A stretch of 64,000 bases of DNA from Ranitomeya imitator (taxonomy: Eukaryota). The notes under the pieces were generated by a model that ran no database searches, had not been told where the DNA came from, and was given only the letters and a program-made list of their open reading frames with translations. The position numbers and the translations under genes were made by a program. This document shows, piece by piece, positions 3,001 through 60,461 of the stretch. The stretch covers positions 128,402,001-128,466,000 of the forward strand of contig NC_091289.1 in NCBI RefSeq assembly GCF_032444005.1. The letters run 5' to 3'. Each line of letters starts with the position of its first letter. Position 1 is the stretch's first letter.

Positions 3001-3128
3001 CTGTCATGTGCTGCTGCCATCCTGCGCCCATTCTGTCATGTGCTGCTGCCATCCTGCGCCCGTTCTGTCATGTGCTGCTGCCATCCTGCGCCCCCGTTCT
3101 GTCATGTGCTGCTCCCATCCTGCGCCAC
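1..3128 (+). repeat. Minisatellite, ~32-34 bp unit (TTCTGTCATGTGCTGCTCCCATCCTGCGCCCC(G/T)), with higher-order blocks
   Basis: The unit is reiterated from base 1. The rare variant GTGATGCTCCC recurs at 244, 1139 and 2236 (spacing 895 and 1097 bp). The long Cys/Pro/Leu ORFs are by-products of a stop-free unit. Confidence 0.97.
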
Positions 3129-40692: not shown

Positions 40693-40836
40693 NNNNNNNN
40701 NNNNNNNNNNNNNNNNNNNNNNNNNNNNNNNNNNNNNNNNNNNNNNNNNNNNNNNNNNNNNNNNNNNNNNNNNNNNNNNNNNNNNNNNNNNNNNNNNNNN
40801 NNNNNNNNNNNNNNNNNNNNNNNNNNNNNNNNNNNN
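40693..40836. other. Assembly gap (N run)
   Basis: 144 Ns. Confidence 1.
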
Positions 40837-41625
40837 CAAAGAGAAAGCTGACATGCATGATATATCATGCATGGTGTATAGTGAAGTGAAGATGAACTAT
40901 TTTTTTTAGAGAATAAAAAGTCGGATGCCATACGGAGATACAGTCCAGCATCTGATTTTTAGAGATACAATGCAATTCTGTAACATACCAAACTAAATGG
41001 TCTTTTACATCATTAATAGCTGCTGTGAAAAAAACGGATTGAGCACTGACAGCACACGGATGACAAGTGAGAAAAAAACTTCCAACTTTTGTGGATGAAA
41101 CACTGACTTATGATTTATTCACTTGCATGGACCTACCCTAAGAGCTTCAGATCGTGACTATAGCTTTACCATTGCTGAAGATATATTTCCCTTAACAAGC
41201 CATACTATCTGCTCATTACTATCTAAACTGCCTTTTACATGTCCTAAGACAGTTGTATTTTAATACAGCATTCTGACTTGGGTGCAGGGTGGTTCTGTAA
41301 CTGCTCATCCTGGGCCTCCTGGTTCATGATGAGAGAATTACACTGACTGTTTGCTAGAAAGAATAAGCAGGGAGTAAATCATTCTGTAATGCACGTTTTT
41401 GTTCTCATACATGCCTTGTAGAAATCTGGGCGACAGCACTAATGGAGGATATCATGGTGACCTTTTTTATCTTAAGAGACCATTATAACCCATTACTGCC
41501 TCAATACAACATTAAAATCATCTATATGTTTTGTATAAATGCTATTAATCCATTGCGGTCCCATAGTATTTATTATTATTTCCTGACAGCTTCAGCAAAA
41601 AATGTGCCACTCATAACACTATATA

Positions 41626-43231
41626 TAGTGGGGCAAAAAAGTATTTAGTCAGTCAGCAATAGTGCAAGTTCCACCACTTAAAAAGATGAGAGGCGTCTGT
41701 AATTTACATCATAGGTAGACCTCAACTATGGGAGACAAACTGAGAAAAAAAAATCCAGAAAATCACATTGTCTGTTTTTTTAACAATTTATTTGCATATT
41801 ATGGTGGAAAATAAGTATTTGGTCATAAACAAAATTTCATCTCAATACTTTGTAATATATCCTTTGTTGGCAATGACAGAGGTCAAACGTTTTCTGTAAG
41901 TCTTCACAAGGTTGCCACACACTGTTGTTGGTATGTTGGCCCATTCCTCCATGCAGATCTCCTCTAGAGCAGTGATGTTTTTGGCTTTTCGCTTGGCAGC
42001 ACGGACTTTCAACTCCCTCCAAAGGTTTTCTATAGGGTTGAGATCTGGAGACTGGCTAGGCCACTCCAGGACCTTGAAATGCTTCTTACGAAGCCACTCC
42101 TTCGTTGCCCTGGTGGTGTGCTTTGGATCATTGTCATGTTGAAAGACCCAGCCACGTTTCATCTTCAATGCCCTTGCTGATGGAAGGAGGTTTGCACTCA
42201 AAATCTCACGATACATGGCCCCATTCATTCTTTCATGTACCCGCATCAGTCGTCCTGGCCCCTTTGCAGAGAAACAGCCCCAAAGCATGATGTTTCCACC
42301 ACCATGCTTTACAGTAGGTATGGTGTTTGATGGATGCAACTCAGTATTCTTTTTCCTCCAAACACGACAAGTTGTGTTTCTACCAAACAGTTCCAGTTTG
42401 GTTTCATCAGACCATAGGACATTCTCCCAAAACTCCTCTGGATCATCCAAATGCTCTCTAGCAAACTTCAGACGGACCTGGACATGTACTGGCTTAAGCA
42501 GTGGGACACGTCTGGCACTGCAGGATCTGAGTCCATGGTGGCGTAGTGTGTTACTTATGGTAGGCCTTGTTACATTGGTCCCAGCTCTCTGCAGGTCATT
42601 CACTAGGTCCCCCCGCGTGGTTCTGGGATTTTTGCTCACCGTTCTTGTGATCATTCTGACCCCACGGGGTGGGATTTTGCGTGGAGCCCCAGATCGAGGG
42701 AGATTATCAGTGGTCTTGTATGTCTTCCATTTTCTAATTATTGCTCCCACTGTTGATTTCTTCACTCCAAGCTGGTTGGCTATTGCAGATTCAGTCTTCC
42801 CAGCCTGGTGCAGGGCTACAATTTTGTTTCTGGTGTCCTTTGACAGCTCTTTGGTCTTCACCATAGTGGAGTTTGGAGTCAGACTGTTTGAGGGTATGCA
42901 CAGGTGTCTTTTTATACTGATAACAAGTTTAAACAGGTGCCATTACTACAGGTAATGAGTGGAGGAAAGAGGAGACTCTTAAAGAAGAAGTTACAGGTCT
43001 GTGAGAGCCAGAAATCTTGATTGTTTGTTTCTGACCAAATACTTATTTTCCACCATAATATGCAAATAAATTGTTAAAAAAACAGACAATGTGATTTTCT
43101 GGATTTTTTTTTCTCAGTTTGTCTCCCATAGTTGAGGTCTACCTATGATGTAAATTACAGACGCCTCTCATCTTTTTAAGTGGTGGAACTTGCACTATTG
43201 CTGACTGACTAAATACTTTTTTGCCCCACTG
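41626..43231 (-). mobile_element. Full-length Tc1 transposon, copy 1 (1606 bp)
   Basis: ~205-bp IR/DR-type TIRs ((C/T)AGTGGGGCAAAAAAGTATTTAGTCAG), TA TSD. One terminal C is mutated to T. Confidence 0.97.
41842..42864 (-). CDS. Intact Tc1 DD34E transposase, 340 aa
   Basis: Uninterrupted ORF with paired-like N-terminus, GAPRK linker, [14 protein letters not shown] and SPDLNPIE; 34 residues between the second D and E. Confidence 0.97.
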
Positions 43232-43297
43232 TACATTTAACGGTCACCACCTACATTCTGCACATGCACCACCGGTACCCTAAGCACATAGCACATA

Positions 43298-43438
43298 CAG
43301 CGCTGGCAAAAGTTAAGAGACCACTGCAAAATGTTCAGTTTGTCTGATTTTTCTCTTTTCAATTGGGTTAAGGTCTGGAGACTGGGCTGCCCATGACAGG
43401 GCTTTAAAGTGGTGGTCTCTTAATTTTTGCCAGAGCTG
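43298..43438. mobile_element. 141-bp internally deleted Tc1 derivative
   Basis: TIR CAGCGCTGGCAAAAGTTAAGAGACCAC / GTGGTCTCTTAATTTTTGCCAGAGCTG, TA TSD. The antisense core encodes [11 protein letters not shown]. Confidence 0.85.
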
Positions 43439-43471
43439 TATATACCTCCCAAATGCCACCTGCATTTGCAG

Positions 43472-45195
43472 CACCTGATCCCTGGACCTATAGGCACCTG
43501 ATCACTCGATCTATAGGCACCTCAACATTGGTCCTATAGGCATCTGATCACTGGACCTATAGTCACCTGATCAATGGACCTATAGGCACCCGATCACTAC
43601 ACTTATAAGTACCTGATCACTGGACCTATAGGCATCTGATAACTGCTCCTATATGCACCTGATCAGTAGATCTATATTCACCTGATCACTGGACCTATAA
43701 GCACCTGATCACTGGACCTATGGGCACCTGATCACTGGACCTATGGGCACCTGATCACTGGATCTATAGGCACACCTGAACACTGGACCTATTGTCACCT
43801 GATTAGTGGGCCTATAAGCACCTGATCAGTGGGCCTATAGGCATCTGATCACTGGACCCCTAAGCACCTGATCACTGGATTTATATGCACCTGATCAGTG
43901 GACCTATAGGTACCTTATAACTGATCCTACAGGCACCTAATCACTGGACCTATAGGTATATGATTACTGGACCTATAGGCACCTAATCACTGGACCTATA
44001 GGTGCCTAACCAGTGGACCTATAGGCACCTGATCACTGGACCTTTAGGCGCCTGATCACTGGACCTATAGGCACCTGATTACTCATCCTATAGGCATATG
44101 ATTACTGGACCTATAGCCACCTATTGACTGGACCTATAGGCACCTAATCAATGGATCTCTAGGCATCTGATCACTGGACCTTTAGGCACCTGATCACTGG
44201 ACCTTTAGGCACCTGATCACTGGACCTATAGGCACCGGATTACTCATCCTATAGGCACATGATTACTGGATCTATAGTCACCTATTCACTGGACCTATAG
44301 GCACCTAATCAGTGGACCTCTAGGCACCTGATCACTGGACCTTTAGGCACCTGATCACTGGACCTATAGGCAGCTGATTACTCATCCTATAGGCATCTGA
44401 TCACTGGACCTATAGGCACCTGATCACTGGACCTATATGCACCTCATCAGCGGACCTTTAGGCACCTGATTGCTGAACCTATAGGCACCAGATCACTGGA
44501 CCTATATGCACCTGATCACTGGACATTTAGTCATTTTATCAATGGACCTCTAGGCAGCTGATCATTGGACCTATAGGCACCTGATTACTGGACCTATAAT
44601 CACCTATTCACTGGACCTATAGGCACCTAATCAGTGGACCTCTAGGCTCCTGATCACTGGACCTTTAGGCACCTGATCACTGGACCTCTAGGCACCTGAT
44701 CACTGGACTTATAGGCACCTGATTACTCATGCTGTAGGCACCTGATCGCTGGACCTGTACCCACCTTCTCACTGTACCTATGTGCACCTCATCACCAGTC
44801 CTATAGGTGATTGCTGGATCAATAGACACCAGATCACTGGATGTATATGCACCTGATCATTTGTCCTATAGGCACCTGATAACTGGACCTATAGGCACTT
44901 GATTACTCATCCTATAAGCACCTGATCACTGGACCTATAGGCACCTGATCACTGGACCTATATGCACCTCATCACCGGTCCTGTAGGCACCTGATTGCTG
45001 AACCTATAGGCACCAGATCACTGGACCTATATGCACCTGGTCAGTGGTCCTATAGGCACCTGATCATTGGTCCTATAGGCACCTGATCACTGGATCTATA
45101 GGCACCCGATCACTGGACCTATACCCTCCTTCTCTCTGTACCTATATGTATCCCATAACTGGTCCAATAGACACCTGATCAGTGGACCTATAGAC
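43472..45195 (+). repeat. 23-bp minisatellite (CACCTGATCACTGGACCTATAGG)n, ~75 degenerate copies
   Basis: Head-to-tail units without unique spacers. Confidence 0.95.
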
Positions 45196-45576
45196 ACACG
45201 CACTGTACTCAATTTGGAGCAGTGTTGCATTTGTGTGTAGAGCCTACACTTTACATCCATGCCGCACATGTGCCAACTACAACCTGAACACCTGCCTCAC
45301 ATGTGCCACCTTACACGCAAATCACTTGACATAGATCACTTTACACACCAGCACATTTTAACCCCTTAAGGACCTCCAATATGTCTTTTTACTGACTTGA
45401 GATTTAAGAGAATAACATCCTCCCCGATGAGTGAAAAAACCGCAGTTGTCAGTTGCATACTATAGCTGCATCAGCCACGATCAGTGATGGCACCAACCAT
45501 GGTTGTTTAATCGCTTAGATGCTGCTGTCAATAGTGACTACGGCATCTACATAGTTAACAGAGTGTGGGGGCTCCA

Positions 45577-46695
45577 TATATATGGCACAGACTTTGGTAG
45601 ACAAGGACAATGACTCCTGCCTATAGCTCTATAAACTACTAAGGACAATTAATCTATAAGTCCCCTGATGAACCCCCTGAGGAAAGATTACAGGGGAGAA
45701 ACGCGTCGGGACAGCGTGAGCTAATGTATCTACATGTCTGCAAAAAGGGAATCCCTGAGGAGCAAAGAGCTAAGCGAACGATTCTTAAGAGCTATGGTTT
45801 TTGAATCATATGTTGCATCAGTCATGCATGATATTGATGTGGGTATATTTCTCCGATGATAAACCATCGAGCCGTTAATGTACGTCTAACTAATTTTTCT
45901 GTGACACCCATAAGGGCAGCTTAGATTCAGCATAGCTACATAGGGTATTGTTCTCTTGTGTTTAAATTTTTGAGCTGTCAAAGCAATTTTCCATAATACC
46001 CATATAGGGCAGCTTAGATTCAGTATAGCTCTCCTCTTTGTTGTTTTTTTGCCTTGTGGCACTCTATAGTCTGACCACAGATATTTAAAGTCTCCAAGTG
46101 ATTATTGTAACATATTAATGTCTATGTGGTGAAGTAATAGAGGTAGTTACAGTTAGACTGGCTTAGTGAATAGATAGTAGTGCTTATGTGTGTTCATTAT
46201 GGATCTATATTGATCCATATTTTTGTGTTTTGTCTGTGATTATTAGAGTATTAGGGATCACCCAGGGATTTAAGGGGCAGCCGTCGTGGAGCGGGGGCGC
46301 CACATCGCATATTTAGGGTGCCAACCTCTGCTGAGGAAGGATACCAGAATCTAGGGCCTATTAGGGCAAGGATAGGCATATTATACCCTGCACAATCTTT
46401 TTTTCAATTTTTTAATTTTTTAATTTTGATATTTTTGTTATTATTACTTTTTTTCATTTTTTTCATTTTTTACTATATTTGTTTTTTTTTGTTGTTTTTT
46501 TTTTTGTTTTTTTTGGTATCACAAAAATTGTTTCTGTATATGCGATTCTATACATAGGCTGTATCCCTAATTCCTGGTATATGATTCCCTAGTGGGATGT
46601 TTTTTTATCTAGTTTTTGGATTTATGGTATTATCTGGGATTATTAATAAAGATTTATGATTTTAGGGGTAGGTTGTTGTTTGGTAGTGCAGCCTC
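45577..46695 (+). mobile_element. Penelope-like pLTR/3' region
   Basis: Begins with a hammerhead motif, has an internal direct repeat (~45908-45937 / 45999-46029) and AATAAA near 46645. Boundaries approximate. Confidence 0.6.
45660..45712 (+). ncRNA. Minimal type I hammerhead ribozyme (Penelope-type)
   Basis: GTCCC-CTGATGA-AC CCCCTG...CAGGGG A-GAAAC GC GTC-GGGAC: 5-bp stem I, 6-bp stem II, palindromic ACGCGT. Predicted cleavage after C45707. Confidence 0.85.
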
Positions 46696-47792
46696 ATATT
46701 TAACCTCATTGGCACCCTGAGATCATGATTGTGTCCTGATGTTTGCCATGGCAATTCACAGCCAAATAACAGCCTAGAGTCTGTATATAGTGACCTCTTC
46801 AGAAGTTAGCGACATTTAGGTGGTAAGAAATTAAATGTTTAATTCCTGTCATGCCATCGTACATATATGACTGAAAGGCACTTGAAGGGTTCATAAACTA
46901 CCTGAAATTAGTGTTGAATATGTTGAGGGGTGCTGTGTTTGATTTGGTATCACTTTGGGGGATTTTCCAATATATAGGTCTCCCAAAGTCACTTCAAAAC
47001 TGAATAGGTCCGTAAAAACATGTTTTGCAAATTTCCTTGAAAAAATGAAAAATGACTGCTACAATTTTACAGCTTCCAACATCCTAACAAAGTAAAAGAA
47101 CATTTTATAGATGGTGCTGATGTAAAGCACACATGGGTTAAATGGTATTTATTAACTATTTGACGCGGTATGACAGTCTAGACTAAAGCGATCATCATTC
47201 CAAGTTTAAAAATTACATTGTTTTAAAACTATTGCTAAATTACTGATATTTTTATTAAAAAAAAGAAAACAAAACATATCAACCTAAATATACCACTAAT
47301 GTAAAGTTATAACTCCTCACGACAAAACAGTCTCAGAATCACTGGGAAACGTTGATATTCCAGATTTGAAAAATGTGGCCTGGTGTGGCTGAGGTTAAGC
47401 ATTGGTCAAATGCTGTAACTATCTGACTTTGGAGGTGATAACAGCAGACTGGCGGAAGTGTCGGCTGTCGGACCACCACACATCGTGCATAAGGGTAGGT
47501 CATCAGTGTATAAATAGTGCACAACCTCTTCAGGAGATCTGAACCTGTTGTCATCTTACAACAACCTGACGCTGCACCTCCCGAGGAATACCTATGGCAA
47601 GTAATATATATGGCATGTAATGAATAAAGTGGGAGCCATATGCTGAATATTTCTTTCCTTTCTCTGATGCGAGAAGTGAAATGACAGAATGCGTGTGAAT
47701 GATACCTATTCATTAGGGTAACTTCTGCCATAACAAAAAACTTATGCAAAGTAGGTGTTCTGGTTTGGAGGATCCGGCATACCAATACTGTG

Positions 47793-47984
47793 AAAAAAGT
47801 GGAAAATCAAACAAGCGCAAATTCATTAAAACATCACATTTATTTGTAGATAATTAGGAGCTAGTCTTGCTCGAAACGCGTCGACCGTTGCGCTAACATG
47901 TTTTTTAAACTTTACTTTTTCATGTTTTGATCTACAAATAAATGTGATTGATGAATTTTGCATTTGCTGGATTTTCCACTTTTT
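47793..47984. mobile_element. Fold-back Penelope-like remnant with half hammerhead
   Basis: Inverted arms 47793-47851 / 47930-47984 enclose GAGC..GCTC-GAAACGCGTC; the CTGANGA half is missing. Confidence 0.6.
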
Positions 47985-48845
47985 GCTCGCGATTCACTTG
48001 CTCGCGAAACCAGCCTAAAGTCACTGTGCTCTGCACCCTTATTCCAGGCATTTATCAACACGGTGAGCTGATGCCAATATATACCAATACTGTATATTAC
48101 ATGAAAACCTATTCTTTTGGAGGAGCATTAGGTAATGCCACATTTCTCCTCTGCCCAACCCTTATGCAGTTACTTCTAGCTGTGTAAATATTAAGTGTAT
48201 GCAATTTTGTCATTAATAGTTGCATAAAACTGTAAACTGCATTAACCAAGGCAATAAGGTCAAGTATTGCGCTACATGTTGAACATGCACATTAAAGTTA
48301 CCTGCAATAGATATTGAAGGCAATGAGGAATGCCAGATCTAGAAAAAAACTCCATATATCTGAATAATGCCGTAGCCATCTGTGCATTTCCATGCATACT
48401 CGTAGAGCATCTGGCCATTGCGGTAAAGAAAAGAGCAGCAACGTGTCTACTGCGTGTGAGCGTAGCCTAAGCCTTCCTATGTAATAGTGAAATATACAAA
48501 TAAAATGATACACTTCGCTTTCTGTTACCAATAATTCTTCTGCCACTATGTTTGATTACTCAGCAGTGACTAAGCAGGATCAGGAACTACTGACATTTAT
48601 TGTTGCAGAAAATGTTAAGCATTTCCTATTTTTTGGTGCAGTCATTTCATCCATATCTATGTAACAAAATATTTATAAGTAATAAAGGACTAAATCAGAA
48701 TGCAGGATTCATCACAGGATTCTGACTCCATTCTCCTTCCCCAAGACATCATTTGCCATGCTGAAACAGTGCATACACTGTGCTGATGTTAGTTGCTACC
48801 ACCGACATCTGTCAATTCTGCATTCAATGCCAAAGTAGTTATAAG

Positions 48846-49394
48846 CAGGGGCGGACATATCATTAGTTCAACCTGTGCAGCTGCTAAGAGGGCCCATAGG
48901 TTTCCACCTCCAAAGCAGATGGAATTGTGCATTATGATGAGCTGTTGGGCTCTTAGGCTACTTTCACACTTGCGTCAGTACGGGTCCGTCGCTAAGCGTC
49001 AGCGCGACGTACCGACGCACGTTGTGAAAATTTGGCCAAATTGGGCAGCGGATGCAGTTTTTCAACACATCCGCTTCCCATTGTAAAGTCCTGGGGAGGA
49101 GGGGGTGGAGTTCCGGACGCGCATGCGCGATAGGAAATGACGGACCCGACGTACGAAAAAACGTTCCCTTGAATGTTTTTTCATGCCGATGGTTCCCCAA
49201 AACACGACGCATCCAGTGCACGTCACAATCCGTCGCTAATACAAATCTACAAGTCTATGAGAAAATGCAGGATCCTGCATTCTCATAAAACGACGGGATG
49301 TGACGGAAGCTGAAAAACGCAATTGTGAAAGTAGCCTTAGGGGCCCATGTACTGTTTTTGCACAGTGGCCCTTCAATGACCGTGTCCACCAGTG
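48846..49394. mobile_element. hAT MITE interrupted by a Harbinger MITE
   Basis: CAGGGGCGGACA / TGTCCACCAGTG termini; imperfect 8-bp TSD GTTATAAG/ATCATAAG. Confidence 0.7.
48956..49336. mobile_element. PIF/Harbinger MITE
   Basis: TIR GGCTACTTTCACA / TGTGAAAGTAGCC, TTA TSD. Confidence 0.92.
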
Positions 49395-49797
49395 ATCATA
49401 AGTGACGGCAAAGTTCAGGATTATGCTTGGAGAAAGGAATAAGAGGCAAGGCTATGGGACCGCAGATAGGGTCTGCAAAAGCAAGGTTATGCAAAATTCT
49501 GCATAACATGCTGCCATAGTTACCCGGGTTTTCCAAACAGCAAGCACTGCGATAACAGCTTAATGGATTCTCCTATCCTATTGAATTTCCCTCTATTCCA
49601 GCTCTGTGGTTCTGGTGGCCTCCTCTAGGTCCACAGGTAAACACATGGACATTATTCACGTTGGAGGTGCTTCGAGTTATTAGCCTAATTGATTTTGAAC
49701 AAGAACACTGAAGTTAGTAAAAATGCCATGCCTTTTAAACTGATTTCCTTTTGAGGAATGTCACTCTAGCGTATGGCATATGCGATATACTAATGAC

Positions 49798-50101
49798 CAG
49801 TGATGAGCGAGTATACTCGTTGCTCCGGTTTTCCCTAGCACGCTCGGGTGGTCTCCGAGCATTTGTGACTGCTCGGAGATTAAGTTTTTATTGATGCAGC
49901 TGCATGATTTACAGCCACTAGCCAGCCTGAGTACATGTGGGGGTTGCCTGGTTGCTAGGGAATCCCCACATGTAATCAAGCTGTCAAGTAACAGTAAGTC
50001 ATACAGCTGGAAAACTAAATCTCTGAGCACTCACAAATACTCGGAGACCACCTGAGCGTGCTTGGGAAAACCTGAGCAATGAGTATACTCGCTCATCACT
50101 A
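49798..50101. mobile_element. hAT MITE (304 bp)
   Basis: (C/T)AGTGATGAGCGAGTATACTC TIRs; perfect 8-bp TSD CTAATGAC. Confidence 0.93.
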
Positions 50102-51522
50102 CTAATGACCCTCGGGTTCTGCTCTGCGCTGAGCGTGAACTGAGTGTCATGCGTCTGTGCTCCAATCCTCTTGCATGACAGGATCGGAGCACAGCTGTGA
50201 AGGAGACAGAGAAATTAATTTCTCCACGTCCTCCACTGTTGGCATATATCGCATCGCACTCAGATGATATCCATATTGTACGGTAGTGTGACTCTGGCCT
50301 TTGAGTTACATGTAAATATGCTTATGTTGGTGCTTGGGCTCTATCTGCCTTTTTCGTCTCCATTCATTTGTATATGCTCTGTTTAGCAAAACTAATGGAT
50401 GTATGTTTTTCAGATAGTGGAGAGTTTCTCCTGTAAGATTCAATGTCAATTTTAAAATTTTACATTATCAGCAACATTTTTAATATAAACCTATATGACT
50501 AGGTACCCCTTTGAATCATTTTTTAATATCTTCCACATACAAAAAGTCTGAGGAGTAAAAAATCTTAGCAATCAGTCCTAGAATTTGCTTTTACAACTCT
50601 TATATTGCCCTATGCATTTCCATGGTAGCAGACAACAAGCAAACCCTGTGTAGTCTGATCGATTAATTAGAGTATGAGGGCAGAATGAGACTATCTGTCG
50701 CCAACTTCTTTAAAAAATATCAAATTAGCTTTATCATAGAGGGCAGATGAACAGAAGCATCAGAGTACATAGGGTTTGCTTGCTGTCATCTACCACAATA
50801 ACTACTACAGCAATCAACATTTATATTGAGCTGTACCCAAAAGAAACTCAGAGGTCCAGATTCATTCAGACTGGTGTTTCGTATGCCAGTCTTAATGAGG
50901 GACATACAGGAATAAGATGCACCAAATTCATTAAGACGTGCATGTCACTTAATGAATTTTGAGCATCTTAACAGTGGCATGCACCTTTGTGCATCTCACT
51001 AGATATGTTACTCTAGTCAAGGGCTTTGTCGGATGAACCCCATCCTATCCAGGCTCCTCCCCAGCACCACCCTTCATGACCTTGGATGTACCCAATACGT
51101 CATGGTTGGTAAGTACTTACCAACCTTGAACATACTGGGTTTGTCATGGCTAAAATTCGCACCGCGACCGCACTTAAGGTGATTGTATTAAGGTGCCTGC
51201 TTTTGCCCCAGGGGGTTTTGACACCCCCTTCTACTACAATTGCTGTGATTGCCTGTTCAGTTCTGAACAGTTAATCACAGTGCTTTCACTGACGGGTTGT
51301 AACAGCACCGATCATAGGCTGGAGACTAGCACGCCGACGTCACCAGGGCCAGCTGTGATTGGTGTGTTCGGAGGATGACGCTGATTGCACGAATCAGAGT
51401 GCACAAAGGCAATCTGACCTTAGTATGACTGCTGTTTTGTCTCGCTGTGCTGGGTGTTGTCATGCCACAGACTTTTTAAGCCTGTGCCATCACTGCTGCT
51501 TGTTTTCCTGTGATTCTTGAAA

Positions 51523-51940
51523 GAAAGAAGTTGTTCCTAATCCATTCCTGATCAGTATATTTTTCCTAAGCCACCTTAATCCCCCACTCACCCTTTTCCC
51601 CCCTTTTTTCCCTCTCTCTAACCATCTCCTCACTCCCCTTCTGCTGCCGAGTGCTGATCAATAATTGATCGCTGATCAGAACTCGAAAACTCGATTTTTG
51701 GCAGTTTTTGTTTGTATGTCCTGCAGTAGAAGAAGAAGGTCCTGATCCATTCCTGATCCATAGCTTTTTCCTAATTCACCCCAATCGCCCTCTATCCCAC
51801 CTTTCCTCCTCTCCCCTCTCCCTAACCCCTTCCCCACTCCCCCTTCTGCTGCCGAGCATTGATCAGTAATTGATCGCTGATCAGAACTTGATAGCCCGAG
51901 TTTTGGCAGTTTTTTTTGGTTTGTGTATCCTGCTGCAGCT
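51523..51940 (+). repeat. Two diverged tandem copies of a ~205-bp unit
   Basis: CCATTCCTGATC...CCCCTTCTGCTGCCGAG...TGATCGCTGATCAGAACT...TTTTGGCAGTTTTT occurs twice. Confidence 0.85.
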
Positions 51941-51974
51941 GAGCGCTGATTAGTGACACAAATCCATGAGTGTC

Positions 51975-52577
51975 CATGCTAGCTGTTTTCTAGGACAAAA
52001 GCTCCTACTTAAAGAATACACCAAAGTAGTGAATAATGAATATCTACCAATACATCAAAACATCCAAGATGTTCAAATACAGCTACTGAAATCAAGACAT
52101 CCATGCATCCGAACCGCAATTACCCTGTATGAACATGATTTAAATTTAGAAGAGAAATGGCGTGAACTTTGGGTCACTGCAGTAGACGATGAGCCTCAAA
52201 CGTTTCCTCACTTTCAAAATCCACCACCAGGCTTCAATCTGCCAAGGAAAGCCTGGGTCACTTTGAATCGTATCAGAACAAACTTTGGTGTCTGTGCAGA
52301 TCTTATGCATAAGTGGGGAAAATCTGACTCTCCTGCCTGTGATTGTGGAGCTGATCGTCAAACAATTCAGCACATTGTCGAGGAATGTCCCCTCAGATCT
52401 TATACTGGTGACAAGAATGATTTCTACATTGGAAATGACAATGTTATTGCATACATAGAGAACCTTGATATCCGACTCCGATTTCTGTTCCTTTGTTCTT
52501 TTCAATCACTGTTTATTATTGTTTGTTATTTATTCTTATGTGATGTTAAAATATATGTTCATACGATTAAATAAATT
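51975..52577 (+). mobile_element. 5'-truncated non-LTR retrotransposon, RTEX-like ORF2 C-terminus
   Basis: PPGFNLPRKAWVTLNRIRT...HKWGKSDSPACDCGADRQTIQHIVEECP (CxC..H....C knuckle). The 3' end is CATACGATTAAATAAAT. Clade assignment is from recall. Confidence 0.7.
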
Positions 52578-52689
52578 CAGGACCTTTTTCGTCTTTGTTT
52601 ATTCCTCCCTCCTTGCACCACCTTTGTGTTTGCGTCCTACAGTTGCCGTGCACTAATCAGTGCCATAAAATGCATGACAGCTACAGTAA

Positions 52690-53049
52690 AGGCCTCATTT
52701 TGACACAGTCAGTGCGGGAAGCTGACGGCGGGGGACGTGACAGACATCGGAATGTGAGTATGTAGTGTTTTTGTTTTTTTTTACTTTTACAATGGTAACC
52801 AGGGTAAATATCGGGTTACTAAGCGCGGCCCTGCGCTTAGTAACCCGATGTTTACCCTGGTTACCCGGGGACTTCGGCATCGTTGAAGACAGTTTCAACG
52901 ATGCCGAAGTTGTTCCCCGGACCGTTGGTCGCTGGAGAGAGCTGTCTGTGTGACAGCTCCCCAGCGACCACACAACGACTTACCAACGATCATGGCCAGG
53001 TCGTATCGTTGGTCGTGATCGTTGGTAAGTCGTTTAGTGTAACGGTGCC
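52690..53049. mobile_element. Harbinger-like MITE remnant with central hairpin
   Basis: Right end AGTGTAACGGTGCC-TTA. Near-perfect palindrome GGTAACCAGGGTAAA...TTTACCCTGGTTACC at ~52793-52865. Confidence 0.65.
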
Positions 53050-53052
53050 TTA

Positions 53053-53660
53053 AGAGTGAAGTTATCAGTAAACTAGAAGATTATGAGACAAAGTCAAGTG
53101 AAAAGTTTCGGAGAAAGCCTATTAGTATTCGAAGTGAAGATGGAGGTGAATTCACAGGACATCAAATAAAATACTATTTAAGACAGAATGCAATAGAAGA
53201 CCAAAGAACCATCCCATACACAACTGAACAGAATGGTGTAGCAGAGAGAAATAATAGAAACTTGACTGAAATTATTAGGTGTATGCTAACAGATTCCAAT
53301 CTACTTGAAAAATATTGGGGTGCAGCTGCAATGACAGCCACTTATCTACAGAAACGACTCTTTTCAAGAAATGGGGAGAAGAACTCATATGAACTGTGGT
53401 ATGGTGAGAAACCAAGTGTGAAATACTTGGTTTTGGTTGCAAAGCATTTGCATTAATTCCACAGGAGATGGGCTCCAAATTCAAAACAGAGGCATAGCAG
53501 GAATCTTTGTTGGATATAGTGACAACTGCAAAGGGTCCAGAACCCTAGATCCTAAAACAGACAGAATTATTTTATGTAACAGTGTAACTTTCGTTGAGGA
53601 ATTAAACAACAACACAATAACAACACTTGAAGCACTAAAGGAGAAAACCAATAATGAAAA
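53053..53660 (+). pseudogene. Ty1/Copia integrase fragment
   Basis: IRSEDGGEF...PYTTEQNGVAERNNRNLTEIIRCML...YELWYGEKP, then frameshifted VFGCKAF...GIFVGYS (Copia integrase core and SH3-like fold). Confidence 0.88.
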
Positions 53661-53764
53661 GATTATGACAATTACATGGCAGATTCTCTCCTGTGTGACT
53701 GTGCCTTGGCTGCAGACATATCATATATATACTGTATATACATACATATATATATATATATATA

Positions 53765-55370
53765 CAGTGGGGCAAAAAAGTATTTAGTCAGTCAGCAATA
53801 GTGCAAGTTCCACCACTTAAAAAGATGAGAGGCGTCTGTAATTTACATCATAGGTAGACCTCAACTATGGGAGACAAACTGAGAAAAAAAAATCCAGAAA
53901 ATCACATTGTCTGTTTTTTTATCATTTTATTTGCATATTATGGTGGAAAATAAGTATTTGGTCAGAAAAAAAATTTCATCTCAATACTTTGTAATATATC
54001 CTTTGTTGGCAATGACAGAGGTCAAACGTTTTCTGTAAGTCTTCACAAGGTTGCCACACACTGTTGTTGGTATGTTGGCCCATTCCTCCATGCAGATCTC
54101 CTCTAGAGCAGTGATGTTTTTGGCTTTTCGCTTGGCAACACGGACTTTCAACTCCCTCCAAAGGTTTTCTATAGGGTTGAGATCTGGAGACTGGCTAGGC
54201 CACTCCAGGACCTTGAAATGCTTCTTACGAAGCCACTCCTTCGTTGCCCTGGCGGTGTGCTTTGGATCATTGTCACGTTGAAAGACCCAGCCACGTTTCA
54301 TCTTCAATACCCTTGCTGATGGAAGGAGGTTTGCACTCAAAATCTCACGATACATGGCCCCATTCATTCTTTCATGTACCCGGATCAGTCGTCCCGGCCC
54401 CTTAGCGGAGAAACAGCCCCAAAGCATGATGTTTCCACCACCATGCTTTACAGTAGGTATGGTGTTTGAAGGATGCAACTCAGTATTCTTTTTCCTCCAA
54501 ACACGACAAGTTGTGTTTCTACCAAACAGTTCCAGTTTGGTTTCATCAGACCATAGGACATTCTCCCAAAACTCCTCTGGATCATCCAAATGCTCTCTAG
54601 CAAACTTCAGATGGGCCCGGACATGTACTGGCTTAAGCAGTGGGACACGTCTGGCACAACAGGATCTGAGTCCATGGTGGCGTAGTGTGTTACTTATGGT
54701 AGGCCTTGTTACATTGGTCCCAGCTCTCTGCAGTTCATTCACTAGGTCCCCCCGCTTGGTTCTGGGATTTTTGCTCACCGTTCTTGTGATCATTCTGACC
54801 CCACGGGGTGGGATTTTGCGTGGAGCCCCAGATCGAGGGAGATTATCAGTGGTCTTGTATGTCTTCCATTTTCTAATTATTGCTCCCACTGTTGATTTCT
54901 TCACTCCAAGCTGGTTGGCTATTGCAGATTCAGTCTTCCCAGCCTGGTGCAGGGCTACAATTTTGTTTCTGGTGTCCTTTGACAGCTCTTTGGTCTTCAC
55001 CATAGTGGAGTTTGGAGTCAGACTGTTTGAGGGTGTGCACAGGTATCTTTTTATACTGATAACAAGTTTAAACAGGTGCCATTACTACAGGTAATGAGTG
55101 GAGGAAAGAGGAGACTCTTAAAGAAGAAGTTACAGGTCTGTGAGAGCCAGAAATCTTGATTGTTTGTTTCTGACCAAATATTTATTTTCCACCATAATAT
55201 GCAAAAAAAATGATAAAAAAACAGACAATGTGATTTTCTGGATTTTTTTTTCTCAGTTTGTCTCCCATAGTTGAGGTCTACCTATGATGTAAATTACAGA
55301 CGCCTCTCATCTTTTTAAGTGGTGGAACTTGCACTATTGCTGACTGACTAAATACTTTTTTGCCCCACTG
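53765..55370 (-). mobile_element. Full-length Tc1 transposon, copy 2 (1606 bp)
   Basis: Intact CAGTGGGGC...GCCCCACTG TIRs, inserted in a (TA)n tract. Confidence 0.97.
53981..55003 (-). CDS. Intact Tc1 DD34E transposase, 340 aa
   Basis: Uninterrupted ORF with the catalytic triad retained. Confidence 0.97.
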
Positions 55371-55394
55371 TATATATATATATATATATATATA

Positions 55395-56998
55395 CAGTAC
55401 AGACCAAAAGTTTGGACATACCTTCTGATTTAAAGATTTTTCTGTATTTTCATGATTATGAAAATTGTAAATTCACACTGAAGGCATCAAAACTATGAAT
55501 TAACACATGTGGAATTATATACTTAACAAAAAAGTGTGAAACAACTGAAAATATGTCTTATATTTTAGGTTCTTCAAAATAGCCACCTTTTGCTTTGATG
55601 ACTGCTTTTCACACTCTTGGCATTCTCTTGATGAGCTTCAAGAGGTAGTCACCGGGAATAGTTTTCACTTCACAGGTGTGCCCTGTCAGGTTTAATAAGT
55701 GGGATTTATTGCCTTATAAATGGTGTTGGGACCATCAGTTTTGTTGCGCAGAAGTCTGGTGGATGCACAGCTGATAGTCCTACTGAATATACTGTTAGAA
55801 TTTGTATTATGGCAAGAAAAAATCAGCTAAGTAAAGAAAAACGAGTGACCATCATTACTTTAAGAAATGAAGGTCAGTCAGTCCGAAAAATTGGGAAAAC
55901 TTTGAAAGTGTCCCCAAGTGCAGTTGCAAAAACCATCGAGCACTACAAAGAAACTGGCTCACATGAGGCCCACCCCAGGAAAGGAAGACCAAGAGTCACC
56001 TCTGCTTCTGAGGATAAGTTTATCCAAGTCACCAGCCTCAGAAATCGCAGATTAACAGCAGCTCAGATTAGAGACCAGGTCAATGCCACACAGAGTTCTA
56101 GCAGCAGACACTTCTCTACAACAACTGTTCAGAGGAGACTTTGTGCAGCCTTCATAGTAAAATAGCTGCTAGTAAACCACTGCTAAGGAAAGGCAACAAG
56201 CAGAAGAGACTTGTTTGGGCTAAAGAACACAAGGAATGGACATTAGACCAGTGGAAATCTGTGCTTTGGTCTGATGAGTCCAAATTTGAGATCTTTGGTT
56301 CCAACCACCATGTCTTTGTGCGACACAGAAAAGGTGAACGGATGGACTTTACATGCCTGGTTCCCACCGTGAATCATGGAGGAAGAGGTGTGATGGTGTG
56401 GGGGTGCTTTGCTGGTGACACTGTTGGGGATTTAATCAAAATTGAAGACATACTGAACCAGCATGGCTACCGCAGCATCTTGCAGATGCATGCTATTTTG
56501 TCCATTTTGCGTTTAGTTGGAACATCATTTATTTTTTAACAGGACAATGACCCCAAACACACCTCCTGGCTGTGTAAGGGCTATTTGACCAAGAAGGAGA
56601 GTGATGGGGTGCTACACCAGGTGACCTGGCCTCCACAGTCACCAGACCTGAACCCAATCGAGATGGTTTGGGGTGAGTTGGACCACAGAGTGAAGGCAAA
56701 AGGCCAACAAGTGCTAAGCATCTCTGGGAACTCCTTCAAGATTGTTGGAAGGCTATTCCCGGTGACTACCTCTTGAAGTTCATCAAGAGAATGCCAAAAG
56801 TGTGCAAAGCAGTCATCAAAGCAAAAGGTGGCTACTTTGAAGAACCTAGAATATAAGACATATTTTCAGTTGTTTCACACTTTGTTAAGTATATAATTCC
56901 ACATGTGTTAATTCATAGTTTTGATGCCTTCAGTGTGAATTTACAATTTTCATAGTCATGACAATACAGAAAAATCTTTAAATGAGAAGGTGTGTCCA
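55395..56998 (+). mobile_element. Tc1 transposon of a different family, defective; right TIR runs into the gap
   Basis: TIR CAGTACAGACCAAAAGTTTGGACA; the matching right TIR ends ...GGTGTGTCCA at the N run. Confidence 0.92.
55809..56856 (+). pseudogene. Frameshifted Tc1 transposase
   Basis: MARKNQLSKEKR...[29 protein letters not shown] and AKGGYFEE spread over several frames. Confidence 0.93.
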
Positions 56999-57126
56999 NN
57001 NNNNNNNNNNNNNNNNNNNNNNNNNNNNNNNNNNNNNNNNNNNNNNNNNNNNNNNNNNNNNNNNNNNNNNNNNNNNNNNNNNNNNNNNNNNNNNNNNNNN
57101 NNNNNNNNNNNNNNNNNNNNNNNNNN
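56999..57126. other. Assembly gap (N run)
   Basis: 128 Ns. Confidence 1.
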
Positions 57127-57337
57127 TGTTATGTGATGTATTGTGCTGATTGTAATGTAATAAAACACAGTCACAGTGATGGACGTTGTCACCTGAGCCT
57201 GTTGTACAATAACAGGCACAACAATGATGAATAATGGGGTCAATCCAAGGAATGGAGAAAAATGGTGGTTGAGTTCATTGCTGCCACAGGTAATGAGGTG
57301 ATGTATTACTGGGGTAATGGTATAAAAACTTTATTTA

Positions 57338-57380
57338 TTGCTACGCGCTTCAGAGCCGTTCTACCTCCTTCATCAGGCAG
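57338..57380 (-). ncRNA. Decayed Penelope-type hammerhead motif
   Basis: The minus strand reads CTGC-CTGATGA-AGGAG...CTCT-GAAG CGCGTA-GCAA; GAAA is mutated to GAAG. Confidence 0.55.
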
Positions 57381-57579
57381 GTGTACATACACAATGAATA
57401 CCCATGATTTTATTAATTCATTGAGAACATATATCATTTGGATCCAACCCTTGATTGGCTGGAAAATTAGCTGCCGCTTGTGCTGTGCTCTGTCTTAGTG
57501 GTAACAGACTATAGGAAAAAAACACACAGATTAAAACCATACATACACTAAAACTGAACCCTCCGAAGGTGCACAAAAG

Positions 57580-58807
57580 CTTACAGAGTGATCTATTTCA
57601 ATTTTCAAGTGCTTATTTCCGCCGCTAATATTAACGATTATGGCTTATAGAAAATGAAAACACAAAAGTCATTATCTCAATAAATTAGAATAATTAACAA
57701 AAAAACCTGCAAAAGCTTCCTAAGCATTTAAAAAGGCCATGTGGTCTGTTTCAGTAGGTTCGACAATCATGGGGAAGACTGCTGATTTGACAGATGTCCA
57801 GAAGGCAGTCATTGACACACTCCACAAGGAGGTTAAGGCATAAAAGGTCATTGCTAAAAAAGCTGGCTGTTCACAGAGAGCTGTATCCAAGCTTATTAAT
57901 GGAAAGTTGAGTGGAAGTAAAAAGTGTGGTAGAAAAAGGTGCATAAGCAACCCCGATAACCGCAGACTAGAAAGGATTGTTAAGAAAAGGGCATTCAAAA
58001 ATTTGGGGGAGATTCACAAGGAGTGGACTGCTGCTGGAGACATTGCTTCAAGAGCCACCACACACAGACATGGGCTACAAGTGTCACATTCCTTGTGTCA
58101 AGCCACTCATGGCCAATAGACAACACCAGAAGCGTCTTTCCTGGGCCAAGGAGAAAAAGAATTGGACTGTTGCTCAGTGGTCCAAGGTGTTGTTACTAGA
58201 TGAAAGTACAGTTTGCAGTTGATTTGGAAATCAAGGTCCCAGACACAGGAAGAGTGGAGAAGCATACACTCCAAGAATGGCCTTTTCTTATCAATCCTTT
58301 CAAGGCTATGATTGCTTGTGAACCTTTTTCTACCACACATTTTCTTTCCACTCAACTTTCCATTAATATGCTTGGATAAAGCACTCTGTGAACAGCCAGC
58401 TTCTTGAGCAATAACATTTTGTGGCTTGGATAAAGCACTCTGTGAACAGCCAGCTTCTTGAGCAATAACATTTTGTGGCTTACCTTCCTTGTGGAGTGTG
58501 TCAATGACTGCCTTCTGGACATCTGTCAAATCAGCAATTTTTCCCATGATTGTGAAGCCTACTGAAACAGACTAAGGGACCTTTTTAGATGCTCAGGAAG
58601 TATTTGCAGGTGTTTTTTACTAATCTAATTTACTGAGATAGTGACTTTTGTGTTTTCATTGGCTGTAAGTCAGAAACATTAACAGAAATAAACACTTGAA
58701 ATATATCACTCTGTAGTGACTCTATATAATGAGTTTTTATTTTTTTTATTGTATAACTGAAATAAATTAACCTATTTATGATATTCTAGTTTTGTGAGAA
58801 GCACCTG
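57580..58807. mobile_element. Two 5' halves of an old Tc1 element in inverted (tail-to-tail) arrangement
   Basis: Plus-strand MGKTADLTDVQKAVIDTLH from ~57769 and minus-strand MGKIADLTDVQKAVIDTLH from 58547 (with a 54-bp internal duplication). Terminus TTTTGTGAGAAGCACCTG at 58807. Confidence 0.8.
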
Positions 58808-58836
58808 TGTGTGTCCAACAGCCACCTTACAATATA

Positions 58837-60443
58837 CAGTGGGGCAAAAAAGTATTTAGTCAGTCAGCAATAGTGCAAGTTCCACCACTTAAAAAGATGA
58901 GAGGCGTCTGTAATTTACATCATAGGTAGACCTCAACTATGGGAGACAAACTGAGAAAAAAAAATCCAGAAAATCACATTGTCTGTTTTTTTTAACATTT
59001 TATTTGCATATTATGGTGGAAAATAAGTATTTGGTCAGAAACAAAATTTCATCTCAATACTTTGTAATATATCCTTTGTTGGCAATGACAGAGGTCAAAC
59101 GTTTTCTGTAAGTCTTCACAAGGTTGCCACACACTGTTGTTGGTATGTTGGCCCATTCCTCCATGCAGATCTCCTCTAGAGCAGTGATGTTTTTGGCTTT
59201 TCGCTTGGCAACACGGACTTTCAACTCCCTCCAAAGGTTTTCTATAGAGTTGAGGTCTGGAGACTGGCTAGGCCACTCCAGGACCTTGAAATGCTTCTTA
59301 CAAAGCCACTCCTTCGTTGCCCTGGCGGTGTGCTTTGGATCATTGTCATGTTGAAAGACCCAGCCATGTTTCATCTTCAATGCCCTTGCTGATGGAAGGA
59401 GGTTTGCACTCAAAATCTCACGATACATGGCCCCATTCATTCTTTCATGTACCCGGAGCAGTCGTCCTGGCCCCTTTGCAGAGAAACAGCCCCAAAGCAA
59501 GATGTTTCCACCACCATGCTTTACAGTAGGTATGGTGTTTGATGGATGCAACTCCGTATTCTTTTTCCTCCAAACACGACAAGTTGTGTTTCTACCAAAC
59601 AGTTCCAGTTTGGTTTCATCAGACCATAGGACATTCTCCCAAAACTCCTCTGGATCATCCAAATGCTCTCTAGCAAACTTCAGATGGGCCCGGACATGTA
59701 CTGGCTTAAGCAGTGGGACATGTCTGGCACTGCAGGATCTGAGTCCACGGTGGCGTAGTGTGTTACTTATGGTAGGCCTTGTTACATTGGTCCCAGCTCT
59801 CTGCAGTTCATTCACTAGGTCCCCCCGCGTGGTTCTGGGATTTTTGCTCACCGTTCTTGTGATCATTCTGACCCCACGGGGTGGGATTTTGCGTGGAGCC
59901 CCAGATCGAGGGAGATTATCAGTGGTCCTGTATGTCTTCCATTTTCTAATTATTGCTCCCACTGTTGATTTCTTCACTCCAAGCTGGTTGGCTATTGCAG
60001 ATTCAGTCTTCCCAGCCTGGTGCAGGGCTACAATTTTGTTTCTGGTGTCCTTTGACAGCTCTTTGGTCTTCACCATAGTGGAGTTTGGAGTCAGACTGTT
60101 TGAGGGTGTGCACAGGTGTCTTTTTATACTGATAACAAGTTTAAGCAGGTGCCATTACTACAGGTAATGAGTGGAGGAAAGAGGAGACTCTTAAAGAAGA
60201 AGTTACAGGTCTGTGAGAGCCAGAAATCTTGATTGTTTGTTTCTGACCAAATACTTATTTTCCACCATAATATGCAAATAAAATGTTAAAAAAACAGACA
60301 ATGTGATTTTCTGGATTTTTTTTTCTCAGTTTGTCTCCCATAGTTGAGGTCTACCTATGATGTAAATTACAGACACCTCTCATCTTTTTAAGTGGTGGAA
60401 CTTGCACTATTGCTGACTGACTAAATACTTTTTTGCCCCACTG
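58837..60443 (-). mobile_element. Full-length Tc1 transposon, copy 3 (1607 bp)
   Basis: Intact TIRs, TA TSD. Confidence 0.97.
59054..60076 (-). CDS. Intact Tc1 DD34E transposase, 340 aa
   Basis: Uninterrupted ORF; triad retained (SPDLNSIE variant). Confidence 0.97.
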
Positions 60444-60461
60444 TACATACATATACATATG

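What the first reader, a model, noticed from the sequence alone, without database searches (positions are those of the whole stretch)
41626..60443. Three independent, near-identical Tc1 copies with intact DD34E transposases within 19 kb
All three have complete ~205-bp IR/DR TIRs, TA TSDs, different flanks and open 340-aa ORFs differing at only a handful of residues. All are on the minus strand. Intact vertebrate Tc1 transposases are uncommon (Sleeping Beauty and Frog Prince were reconstructed from defective copies), so this suggests a recent or ongoing burst with local hopping. It is a candidate naturally active transposon and gene-transfer tool. Copy 1 has a mutated terminal base.
Basis: partly seen in the sequence, partly recalled or inferred. 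Interest (0 to 1): 0.72.

Follow-up and report, generated by a model that had tools for sequence, protein, structure and literature searches.

The report
Three young Tc1 transposons in frog DNA
Three real, full-length copies of a very abundant Tc1 "jumping gene" family, shared between poison frogs and fishes, lie close together with open transposase genes, but they look like ordinary young copies decaying neutrally, not proof of a currently active element.

Summary
Three Tc1 elements of 1606-1607 bp lie on the minus strand at 41626-43231, 53765-55370 and 58837-60443. Each has 208-bp IR/DR inverted repeats, TA duplications, unrelated flanks and an open 340-aa DD34E transposase ORF. The assembly gap (56999-57126) lies outside all three; only the c2-c3 spacing and linkage depend on it.

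- **Age:** the copies are 98.3-98.5% identical in an almost perfect star. Each has 9-15 private changes, so they are roughly a few million years old.
- **Decay:** private changes have dN/dS 0.81, indistinguishable from neutral, and hit near-invariant residues, including ones beside catalytic D244 and E279. Open frames are expected at this age.
- **Abundance:** the family appears to have tens of thousands of copies in this poison-frog genome, so three in 19 kb is compatible with chance. Local hopping is unsupported.
- **Rarity claim is outdated:** intact ZB-like Tc1 copies are published for many frogs and fishes.
- **Horizontal transfer:** a catfish copy is 91% identical in DNA over the whole element (dS 0.13-0.16).

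The scan also noted similar intact Tc1 copies in other windows of this genome. This is a clean example of a known kind. Activity is untested.

The parts
41626..43231 (-). Copy 1, full-length Tc1 element (1606 bp). Its TIRs are 41626-41833 and 43024-43231. The terminal base at 41626 is changed (TAGTG), and there is one mismatch in the inner direct repeat at 41802-41826.
41842..42864 (-). Copy 1 transposase ORF, 340 aa, DDE triad kept. It differs from the 3-copy majority by E90D, R129Q, A130V, H131R, I207M, A251T and V289A. Its states at 90 and 131 equal the fish state.
53765..55370 (-). Copy 2, full-length Tc1 element (1606 bp), inserted in a (TA)n microsatellite. Its TIRs are 53765-53972 and 55163-55370. 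There is one mismatch in the inner direct repeat at 55170-55194.
53981..55003 (-). Copy 2 transposase ORF, 340 aa. Its private replacements are T83K, S116C, A232V and H243R (next to catalytic D244).
58837..60443 (-). Copy 3, full-length Tc1 element (1607 bp). Its TIRs are 58837-59045 and 60236-60443. All four direct-repeat sites match the family motif: outer 58837-58863 and 60417-60443, inner 59014-59038 and 60243-60267.
59054..60076 (-). Copy 3 transposase ORF, 340 aa. Its private replacements are K50R, H110R, R119H, M193L, I207L, R237H, R259C and P277S (two residues before catalytic E279).
   Evidence: At 59458, 59500 and 59928 nearly all family depth in the four runs carries the other letter.
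41624..41625 (.). TA target-site duplication of copy 1 (partner at 43232-43233). The other copies have the same: copy 2 at 53763-53764 and 55371-55372, copy 3 at 58835-58836 and 60444-60445.
56999..57126 (.). Assembly gap (128 N) between copy 2 and copy 3. It is outside all three copies and cuts the right TIR of the neighbouring unrelated Tc1-like element.

Best explanation
These are three separate cut-and-paste insertions of one young, very high-copy autonomous Tc1/DD34E transposon family of the IR/DR type. By the evidence available it belongs to the 'ZB-like' sister clade of the zebrafish ZB element, and the host is a poison-frog (dendrobatid) genome. How it works is inferred from Sleeping Beauty, Tc1 and ZB. 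The 340-aa transposase binds through its paired-like PAI/RED helix-turn-helix domain to the outer and inner direct repeats in each 208-bp inverted repeat. Its DDE domain (D153, D244, E279) excises the element and integrates it at a TA, which is duplicated. The family is shared with teleost fishes at about 90% DNA identity, so it reached frogs, or fishes, by horizontal transfer. Each of the three copies left a near-identical master sequence at about the same time, roughly a few million years ago at 1-2 x 10^-9 substitutions per site per year (an assumed rate). Each has since accumulated mutations neutrally. Their frames are still open because they are young, not because selection keeps them. 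Their closeness most likely reflects the family's density and its taste for TA-rich DNA rather than local hopping. Shown here: anatomy, domain content, independence of the insertions, neutral pattern of change, similarity to fish copies. Inferred: mechanism, age, copy number, clade.
For: Anatomy and independence. Domains and DDE triad aligned to SB100X. Near-star relationship: 12, 15 and 13 changes against the 3-copy majority, none shared within the majority count. With fish outgroups, 37 of 40 variable sites are private. At 3 sites c2 and c3 share the non-outgroup state; one of these is a CpG site and another is the general frog state seen in all Ranitomeya models. Neutral decay: 19 nonsynonymous against 7 synonymous private changes, dN/dS 0.81, p = 0.64 against neutrality. 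The replacements fall at positions invariant or nearly so in 113 homologues. Open frames are expected: P(open) is 0.67-0.75 per copy after 7-10 random substitutions. Abundance: summed word depth over the element is about 1.0 x 10^6 against about 12 on the unique flank in run X1, with similar depth in two other organisms (the tool warns this is not a copy number). This agrees in order of magnitude with the 39,000-78,000 low-divergence Tc1 copies reported in Oophaga pumilio (PMC6278860) and with Tc1 making up 6.6% of the Dendrobates tinctorius assembly (PMC11152451). Frog host: closest proteins are Ranitomeya imitator models at 95-97%, which intermix with the window copies in a tree; the scan's notes also say poison frog. 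Horizontal transfer: Hemibagrus guttatus locus L001 is 91.0% identical over all 1606 bp including the TIRs, L005 89.9%, two Logan contigs 93%. Frog-catfish dS is 0.13-0.16. Another frog, Leptobrachium, is not sister to this clade. ZB-like placement: the TIR end resembles ZB's (21 of 30 bases). By hand alignment the N-terminal 146 residues are 55% identical to ZB, matching the published ZB versus ZB-like bracket of 54% rather than the 34-38% between SB and ZB groups. Size, ORF length, TIR length and TSD match 'ZB-like in Anura'.
Against: No direct evidence on activity either way. Insertion polymorphism could not be tested because short-read contigs break at the element ends. The copy-number figure is rough and mixes fragments with full copies; if young full-length copies numbered only about 10^4, three in 19 kb would be unusual. 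c2 and c3, the two nearest neighbours, share up to 3 states not found in c1, which a quick local hop could also produce. A run guessed to be RNA from the same organism holds the element's words, and published work reports Tc1 transcripts in poison-frog ova, so the family may still be expressed. The ZB-like placement rests on a hand alignment and published identity brackets, not on a tree with reference sequences.
Confidence: 0.85

Rival explanations
1. One reading: an ongoing burst with local hopping. The three copies would be recent daughters of one another, or of a nearby donor, and would encode functional transposases, so this would be a naturally active tetrapod Tc1.
For: Open ORFs with the DDE triad in all three. 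Copy 3 has all four direct-repeat sites and both ends intact. c2 and c3 are 3.5 kb apart plus the gap and share up to 3 states against c1. Family words occur in a run guessed to be RNA. Published work reports expression of high-copy Tc1 in poison-frog ova. Sleeping Beauty is known to hop locally (established knowledge).
Against: Pairwise divergence is 1.5-1.7%, against less than 1% among copies of the active ZB element. The private changes look neutral and hit conserved residues next to D244 and E279. 37 of 40 variable sites are private, and the shared ones include a CpG site and the general frog state. At the apparent family density, dozens to hundreds of such clusters are expected by chance. 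Copy 1 has a changed terminal base and an inner-repeat mismatch, and copy 2 has an inner-repeat mismatch.
Confidence: 0.12
2. Assembly artefact or segmental duplication: the three copies are one element duplicated by misassembly or copied together with its surroundings.
For: The region is repeat-rich and has two scaffold gaps. No contig bridged an element-flank junction.
Against: The flanks of the three copies are unrelated beyond the TA. Each copy has its own TSD and its own 9-15 private substitutions. The unique left flank at 57162-57690 is confirmed at 99.6% by an independent contig (record 1).
Confidence: 0.02
3. Host-domesticated transposase genes kept open by selection for a cellular function.
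For: Three open ORFs. Another window of this genome holds a domesticated Tc1 HTH gene (scan note s1-288114).
Against: Complete TIRs and TSDs. dN/dS is about 0.8 on private changes. The family is multi-copy, with tens of thousands of relatives.
Confidence: 0.01

Closest known systems
'ZB-like' Tc1/DD34E transposons of anurans (Jia et al. 2022, PMC9777934)
   Same: Length class (1596-1618 bp versus 1606-1607 here), 340-343-aa transposase, TIRs up to about 211 bp starting CAGTG, TA TSD, preference for AT repeats, patchy fish/frog distribution explained by horizontal transfer, and hundreds to thousands of intact copies in some frogs. The identity brackets fit.
   Different: The entries listed there for Ranitomeya imitator and Oophaga pumilio have a 343-aa ORF (O. 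pumilio: 1598 bp, 45-bp TIRs), so this 340-aa/208-bp-TIR lineage may be a different sub-lineage.
ZB (Tc1-8B_DR), the native active zebrafish transposon (Shen et al. 2021, PMC7913693)
   Same: IR/DR Tc1, about 1.6 kb, about 200-bp TIRs, TA TSD. The TIR ends are similar (21 of 30 bases). It shares the motifs [11 protein letters not shown] and [10 protein letters not shown].
   Different: Only about 55% identical over the N-terminal 146 residues (hand alignment). ZB has 341 aa, its copies are more than 99% identical to each other, and it is shown to be active; here the copies are 98.3-98.5% identical and activity is untested.
High-copy 'Tc1-3_SSa-like' element of the strawberry poison frog (Rogers et al. 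2018, PMC6278860)
   Same: Poison-frog host, tens of thousands of low-divergence copies, closest relatives in fishes including salmonids (here Hucho and Oncorhynchus at 86-89% aa), inferred horizontal transfer, reported transcripts in ova.
   Different: Identity with Tc1-3_SSa itself could not be tested because there is no RepBase sequence in the tools. The closest fish DNA fetched here was a catfish, not a salmon.
Sleeping Beauty (SB100X; PDB 5cr4, 2m8e, 5unk)
   Same: Same domain order, DD34E triad, glycine-rich strip, IR/DR ends and TA target. The catalytic domain aligns end to end at E 5e-81.
   Different: About 56% identity over 103 aligned catalytic residues and about 47% in the PAI subdomain (hand counts), so it is outside the SB clade. 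SB is a reconstructed element.
Passport (PPTN) and the Barb/SSTN/RTTN fish-frog group (Clark et al. 2009, PMC2651795)
   Same: Native IR/DR Tc1 with an intact ORF. The family is shared between fishes and frogs through horizontal transfer.
   Different: Passport's ends (CAGTGCCTTGCATAAGTATTC, from the published primers) differ from the ends here (CAGTGGGGCAAAAAAGTATTTAG). The transposases were not compared.

Membership tests
Tc1/mariner superfamily, DD34E (Tc1) family | [quoted passage not shown] | tested here: met
   D153, D244 and E279 lie in the motifs WSDETK, DNDPKH and NPIENLW, aligned to the same motifs of SB100X. Pfam DDE_3.
Tc1/mariner superfamily, DD34E (Tc1) family | N-terminal bipartite (paired-like) helix-turn-helix DNA-binding domain | tested here: met
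   Pfam HTH_SB (residues 1-52, E 5e-23) and HTH_Tnp_Tc3_2 (70-140) in all three. Matches to the SB PAI and RED structures 2m8e and 5unk.
Tc1/mariner superfamily, DD34E (Tc1) family | TA target-site duplication and terminal inverted repeats | tested here: met
   TA on both sides of each copy. 208-bp TIRs with 1-3 mismatches.
IR/DR subgroup of Tc1-like elements | Long (about 200 bp) inverted repeats, each with an outer and an inner copy of a transposase-binding direct repeat | tested here: met
   Outer repeat at TIR positions 4-27 and inner repeat at 177-201, with 21 of 24 aligned bases matching plus a 1-nt gap. Six outer and six inner sites in the window against 0 in shuffles. Binding itself was not tested.
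ZB-like clade (Jia et al. 2022) | Groups with ZB-like reference transposases in a phylogeny | not testable with these tools
   No reference sequences could be brought into the tools, and the supplements hold no sequences matching ours.
ZB-like clade (Jia et al. 2022) | Identity brackets: about 54% to ZB in the DNA-binding domain, 58-61% to SB in the DDE domain | tested here: inconclusive
   Hand alignment gives 80 of 146 (55%) to ZB's N-terminus and about 56% to SB100X over 103 catalytic residues. This is consistent with the brackets, but it was counted by hand on part of the protein.
Sleeping Beauty clade | More than 80% identity within the clade | tested here: not met
   About 56% identity in the catalytic domain and about 47% in PAI against SB100X/SB (hand count). 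The TIR end is different.
Currently active autonomous transposon | Demonstrated excision or transposition, or insertion polymorphism | not testable with these tools
   Only contig-based runs were available, and no contig bridges a junction.
Currently active autonomous transposon | Transposase sequence equal to the family master, with no private changes at conserved positions | tested here: not met
   4-8 private replacements per copy at positions invariant or nearly so in 113 homologues.
Currently active autonomous transposon | Transcription | tested here: inconclusive
   Run X11 is only guessed to be RNA. It holds the element's words and shows depth on it, but also on the neighbouring repeats. 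Published expression data are for a related frog.

The most novel reading that the evidence does not exclude
The family, though not necessarily these three copies, is still transposing in poison frogs. Some native copies would then encode a fully active transposase, giving a naturally active tetrapod Tc1 of the ZB-like clade recently exchanged with teleosts. In that case the c2-c3 pair could be a true local hop.
Probability: 0.3. Interest if true: 0.45.

Novelty: new member of a known kind. Interest (0 to 1): 0.25.

Why it matters
If the family is still mobile, it would be a natural frog counterpart of ZB and Passport and a possible gene-transfer tool. It would also be a live contributor to the genome gigantism of poison frogs. 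The roughly 91% DNA identity to a catfish element is a clear case of fish-frog horizontal transfer. All of these themes are already published for poison frogs and for ZB-like elements, so the value of this locus is as a well-documented example and a source of native copies to test. It is not a discovery.

Tried and rejected
- **Insertion polymorphism and orthology.** I laid contigs of four runs over copy 3 and its flanks. Contigs break at the element ends, so this could not be decided. The many 'skip' joints between the two TIRs have sides of only 21-25 letters and were not used.
- **Ranitomeya imitator DNA.** A locus could not be fetched because the file was too large.
- **Exact look-up of the three proteins.** None is in the collection.
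- **Searches for our peptide or TIR end** in the supplements of PMC7913693 and PMC9777934 and in the paper library gave no hits.
- **Pfam on ten neighbouring ORFs** gave no host gene and only weak HTH hits in an older element.
- **Two calls failed on term syntax**.
- **Segmental duplication or misassembly** was rejected because of unrelated flanks, separate TSDs and private mutations.
- **Domestication** was rejected because the TIRs are intact and dN/dS is about 0.8.
- **A perfect star tree** was corrected after outgroup polarisation: at 3 sites c2 and c3 share the non-outgroup state.
- **Structure prediction** was not run. The match to the solved SB domain is already decisive for the fold.
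- **The gap** was not filled, looked up or tested for continuity.
Full report

Yes. Repeat finding, alignment and a search for the end motif place three elements at 41626-43231 (c1), 53765-55370 (c2) and 58837-60443 (c3). They are 1606, 1606 and 1607 bp long, and all have the coding strand on the minus strand.

- Each holds one 340-aa ORF from ATG to stop.
- The 27-nt end motif occurs six times in the window and never in 100 shuffles.
- The inverted repeats are 208 bp, with 1-3 mismatches between the left and right arms.
- Each arm has an outer repeat (positions 4-27) and an inner repeat (positions 177-201) that match at 21 of 24 aligned bases, with a 1-nt gap. This is the IR/DR layout.
- Every copy is flanked by TA on both sides, and the flanks share nothing else. 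c2 sits inside a (TA)n microsatellite.
- c1 has TAGTG instead of CAGTG at 41626. In the sense orientation this changes the last base of the 3' end.

**2. The assembly gap**

The window has N runs at 40693-40836 and 56999-57126. Neither touches a copy, a TIR or an ORF of the three, so no reading frame depends on them. The second gap lies between c2 and c3. It removes the outer roughly 18 bases of the right TIR of a different Tc1-like element, whose left end is at 55395. The contig therefore ended inside a repeat. What depends on the join is only the c2-c3 distance, their linkage and their relative orientation. I did not look up or fill the gap and did not test continuity.

**3. What the protein is**

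All three ORFs carry Pfam HTH_SB, HTH_Tnp_Tc3_2 and DDE_3. Residues 116-340 align without gaps to the solved catalytic domain of Sleeping Beauty SB100X (5cr4, E 5e-81), and the N-terminus matches the solved PAI and RED subdomains.

The motifs WSDETK, DNDPKH and NPIENLW hold D153, D244 and E279, i.e. DD34E. The glycine-rich strip, the PRSGAPRK (GRPR-like) motif and the RVPLLK linker are present. The inferred mechanism is that of SB, Tc1 and ZB: transposase binds the four direct repeats, cuts at the ends and integrates at TA. This mechanism is inferred from homology and was not tested.

**4. How the three copies relate**

Pairwise they differ at 24-27 nucleotides (98.3-98.5% identity). Against their majority they carry 12, 15 and 13 changes, with no column lacking a majority.

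I polarised the variable sites with fish and Logan copies. Of 40 variable sites, 37 are private to one copy. At 3 sites (sense positions 637, 759 and 1446) c1 has the outgroup state and c2 and c3 share the other state.
- Site 637 (E90) is the state of all seven Ranitomeya models, so it is the general frog state.
- Site 759 (R131H) is a CpG transition that recurs in other homologues.

The tree is therefore close to a star. The three left nearly the same master at about the same time.

Independent support comes from the read data. At three of c3's private positions (59458, 59500, 59928), nearly all family depth in four runs from three organisms carries the other letter.

Divergence from the master is 0.6-0.9%. 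At an assumed 1-2 x 10^-9 substitutions per site per year this is about 3-9 million years. This is young, but older than the ZB copies of zebrafish (more than 99% identical, under 1 My).

**5. Are the ORFs kept by selection?**

No sign of it.
- Private changes in the ORFs are 19 nonsynonymous against 7 synonymous, giving dN/dS 0.81. This is not different from neutral (p = 0.64).
- They strike positions that are invariant or nearly so in 113 homologues. In c2: T83K and H243R (beside D244). In c3: R119H, R259C and P277S (two residues before E279). In c1: A130V and V289A.
- A simulation gives a 67-75% chance that one such ORF stays open after 7-10 random substitutions, so three open frames have a probability of about 0.35.

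'Intact' therefore means open and young, not proven functional.

In cis, c3 has all four repeat sites and both ends unchanged. c2 has one inner-repeat mismatch. c1 has a terminal-base change and one inner-repeat mismatch.

**6. Host and abundance**

The nearest proteins are Ranitomeya imitator gene models at 95-97% identity. They intermix with the window copies in a tree. Earlier notes of the scan call this genome a poison frog. The species itself is not determined.

In run X1 (same organism; the unique flank matches at 99.6%), the unique flank has word depth about 12 and the element bins about 1.0 x 10^6. Two other organisms show similar values. The tool warns that this is not a copy number. 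As an order of magnitude it points to 10^4-10^5 copies.

That agrees with published figures:
- 39,000-78,000 low-divergence Tc1 copies in Oophaga pumilio (PMC6278860).
- About 897,000 annotated Tc1 pieces, 6.6% of the assembly, in Dendrobates tinctorius (PMC11152451).

The window itself holds three further remnants of other Tc1 families. Other windows of this genome carry notes of intact 1606-1613-bp Tc1 copies (these notes are unchecked).

**7. Is three in 19 kb more than chance?**

Take 40,000-80,000 copies in about 6.5 Gb. The expected number per 19 kb is then 0.11-0.23, and the Poisson probability of three or more is 0.0002-0.0017. That gives roughly 75-600 such clusters genome-wide under uniform insertion, and more given the preference for TA repeats.

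This is my own arithmetic on rough inputs. If young full-length copies numbered only about 10^4, the cluster would be unusual. Together with the near-star tree, local hopping is neither needed nor excluded.

**8. Relatives elsewhere**

A Hemibagrus guttatus (catfish) locus is 91.0% identical to c2 over all 1606 bp: 89% and 88% in the non-coding ends and 92% in the ORF. Another assembly (L005) is 89.9% identical, and two Logan contigs are 93%.

Frog-catfish dS is 0.13-0.16 and dN/dS is 0.38-0.45. For hosts separated for more than 400 million years this can only be horizontal transfer, direct or through intermediates. Salmonids, a characiform and others lie at 85-89% amino-acid identity. The frog Leptobrachium is not sister to the poison-frog clade. 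The direction of transfer was not tested. Fish-frog transfer of Tc1 elements in poison frogs is already published.

**9. Which known family?**

- **Passport:** its ends differ from ours.
- **SB:** by hand count it is about 56% identical in the catalytic domain, outside the more than 80% seen within the SB clade.
- **ZB:** its TIR end is similar (21 of 30 bases). My hand translation of the printed ZB gene gives 80 of 146 identical residues (55%) in the N-terminal part.

Jia et al. report 54% between ZB and ZB-like DNA-binding domains, against 34-38% between the SB and ZB groups. They describe ZB-like elements in 17 anurans as 1596-1618 bp, 340-343 aa, with TIRs up to 211 bp and TA TSDs. I therefore file the family as most likely ZB-like, pending a proper tree.

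Whether it equals RepBase Tc1-3_SSa, the label used for the top Tc1 of O. pumilio, could not be tested.

**10. Verdict**

This is a clean, young example of a known kind: a horizontally transferred ZB-like Tc1 family that has flooded poison-frog genomes. The claims of rarity and local hopping do not hold on present evidence, and activity is open. I printed no consensus and proposed no repairs.

Noticed in passing
window 55395-56998: A different Tc1-like element (end motif CAGTACAGACCAAAAGTTTGGACA, about 250-bp TIRs, transposase remnant at 56150-56722 with 39% aa identity to ours). It is inserted only 24 bp from copy 2 in the same (TA)n microsatellite, so that microsatellite served twice as a target. 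Its right TIR is cut by the assembly gap.
   Followed up: partly
window 43471-45197: A 23-bp minisatellite with 75 copies at 77% matches (unit GCACCTGATCACTGGACCTATAG), 240 bp from copy 1. A 22-aa Tc1-like fragment lies at 43358-43423.
   Followed up: no
window 42215-42955, 54354-55094, 59427-60167 (+): A 246-aa ORF antisense to each transposase ORF. The stop-free run (240 codons) is also present in the catfish copy and a Logan copy but broken in L005. Only 1.6% of codon-order shuffles reach that length, and there is no Pfam match. It is probably a by-product of codon content.
   Followed up: partly
window 61439-62420: Extremely high-copy repeat: summed word depth of 2-4 million against about 12 on single-copy flank. 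This is several-fold above the Tc1 family itself, in all three organisms laid.
   Followed up: no
window 57699-58617: An older element with 194-bp inverted arms at 87% identity, an internal perfect 54-bp x 2 tandem repeat (58370-58481) and a 146-aa ORF (58107-58547, minus strand) with weak HTH matches. It lies just left of copy 3.
   Followed up: no
window 42473-42479 (copy 1, sense positions 753, 756, 759): Three substitutions spaced exactly 3 nt apart change three consecutive codons (R129Q, A130V, H131R). One of them equals the fish state. This could be a small conversion tract from another subfamily rather than three independent hits.
   Followed up: partly
window 10-3250 (+): Several overlapping ORFs of 300-700 aa in different frames on one strand, as expected of a long stop-poor tandem or low-complexity array. 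No Pfam match for the longest.
   Followed up: no
L001:1133-2739 (Hemibagrus guttatus): The catfish copy of the same family lies inside a Rap-GAP gene model and has a 340-aa open ORF. One of its ends is changed (CAATG) and its right flank is TG rather than TA.
   Followed up: partly
window 57153-57521: A contig from a second organism (B) covers the unique flank with 25 differences in 368 nt (about 93% identity). An orthologous region therefore exists in a related species and could be used to test whether copy 3 is lineage-specific (record 17).
   Followed up: no
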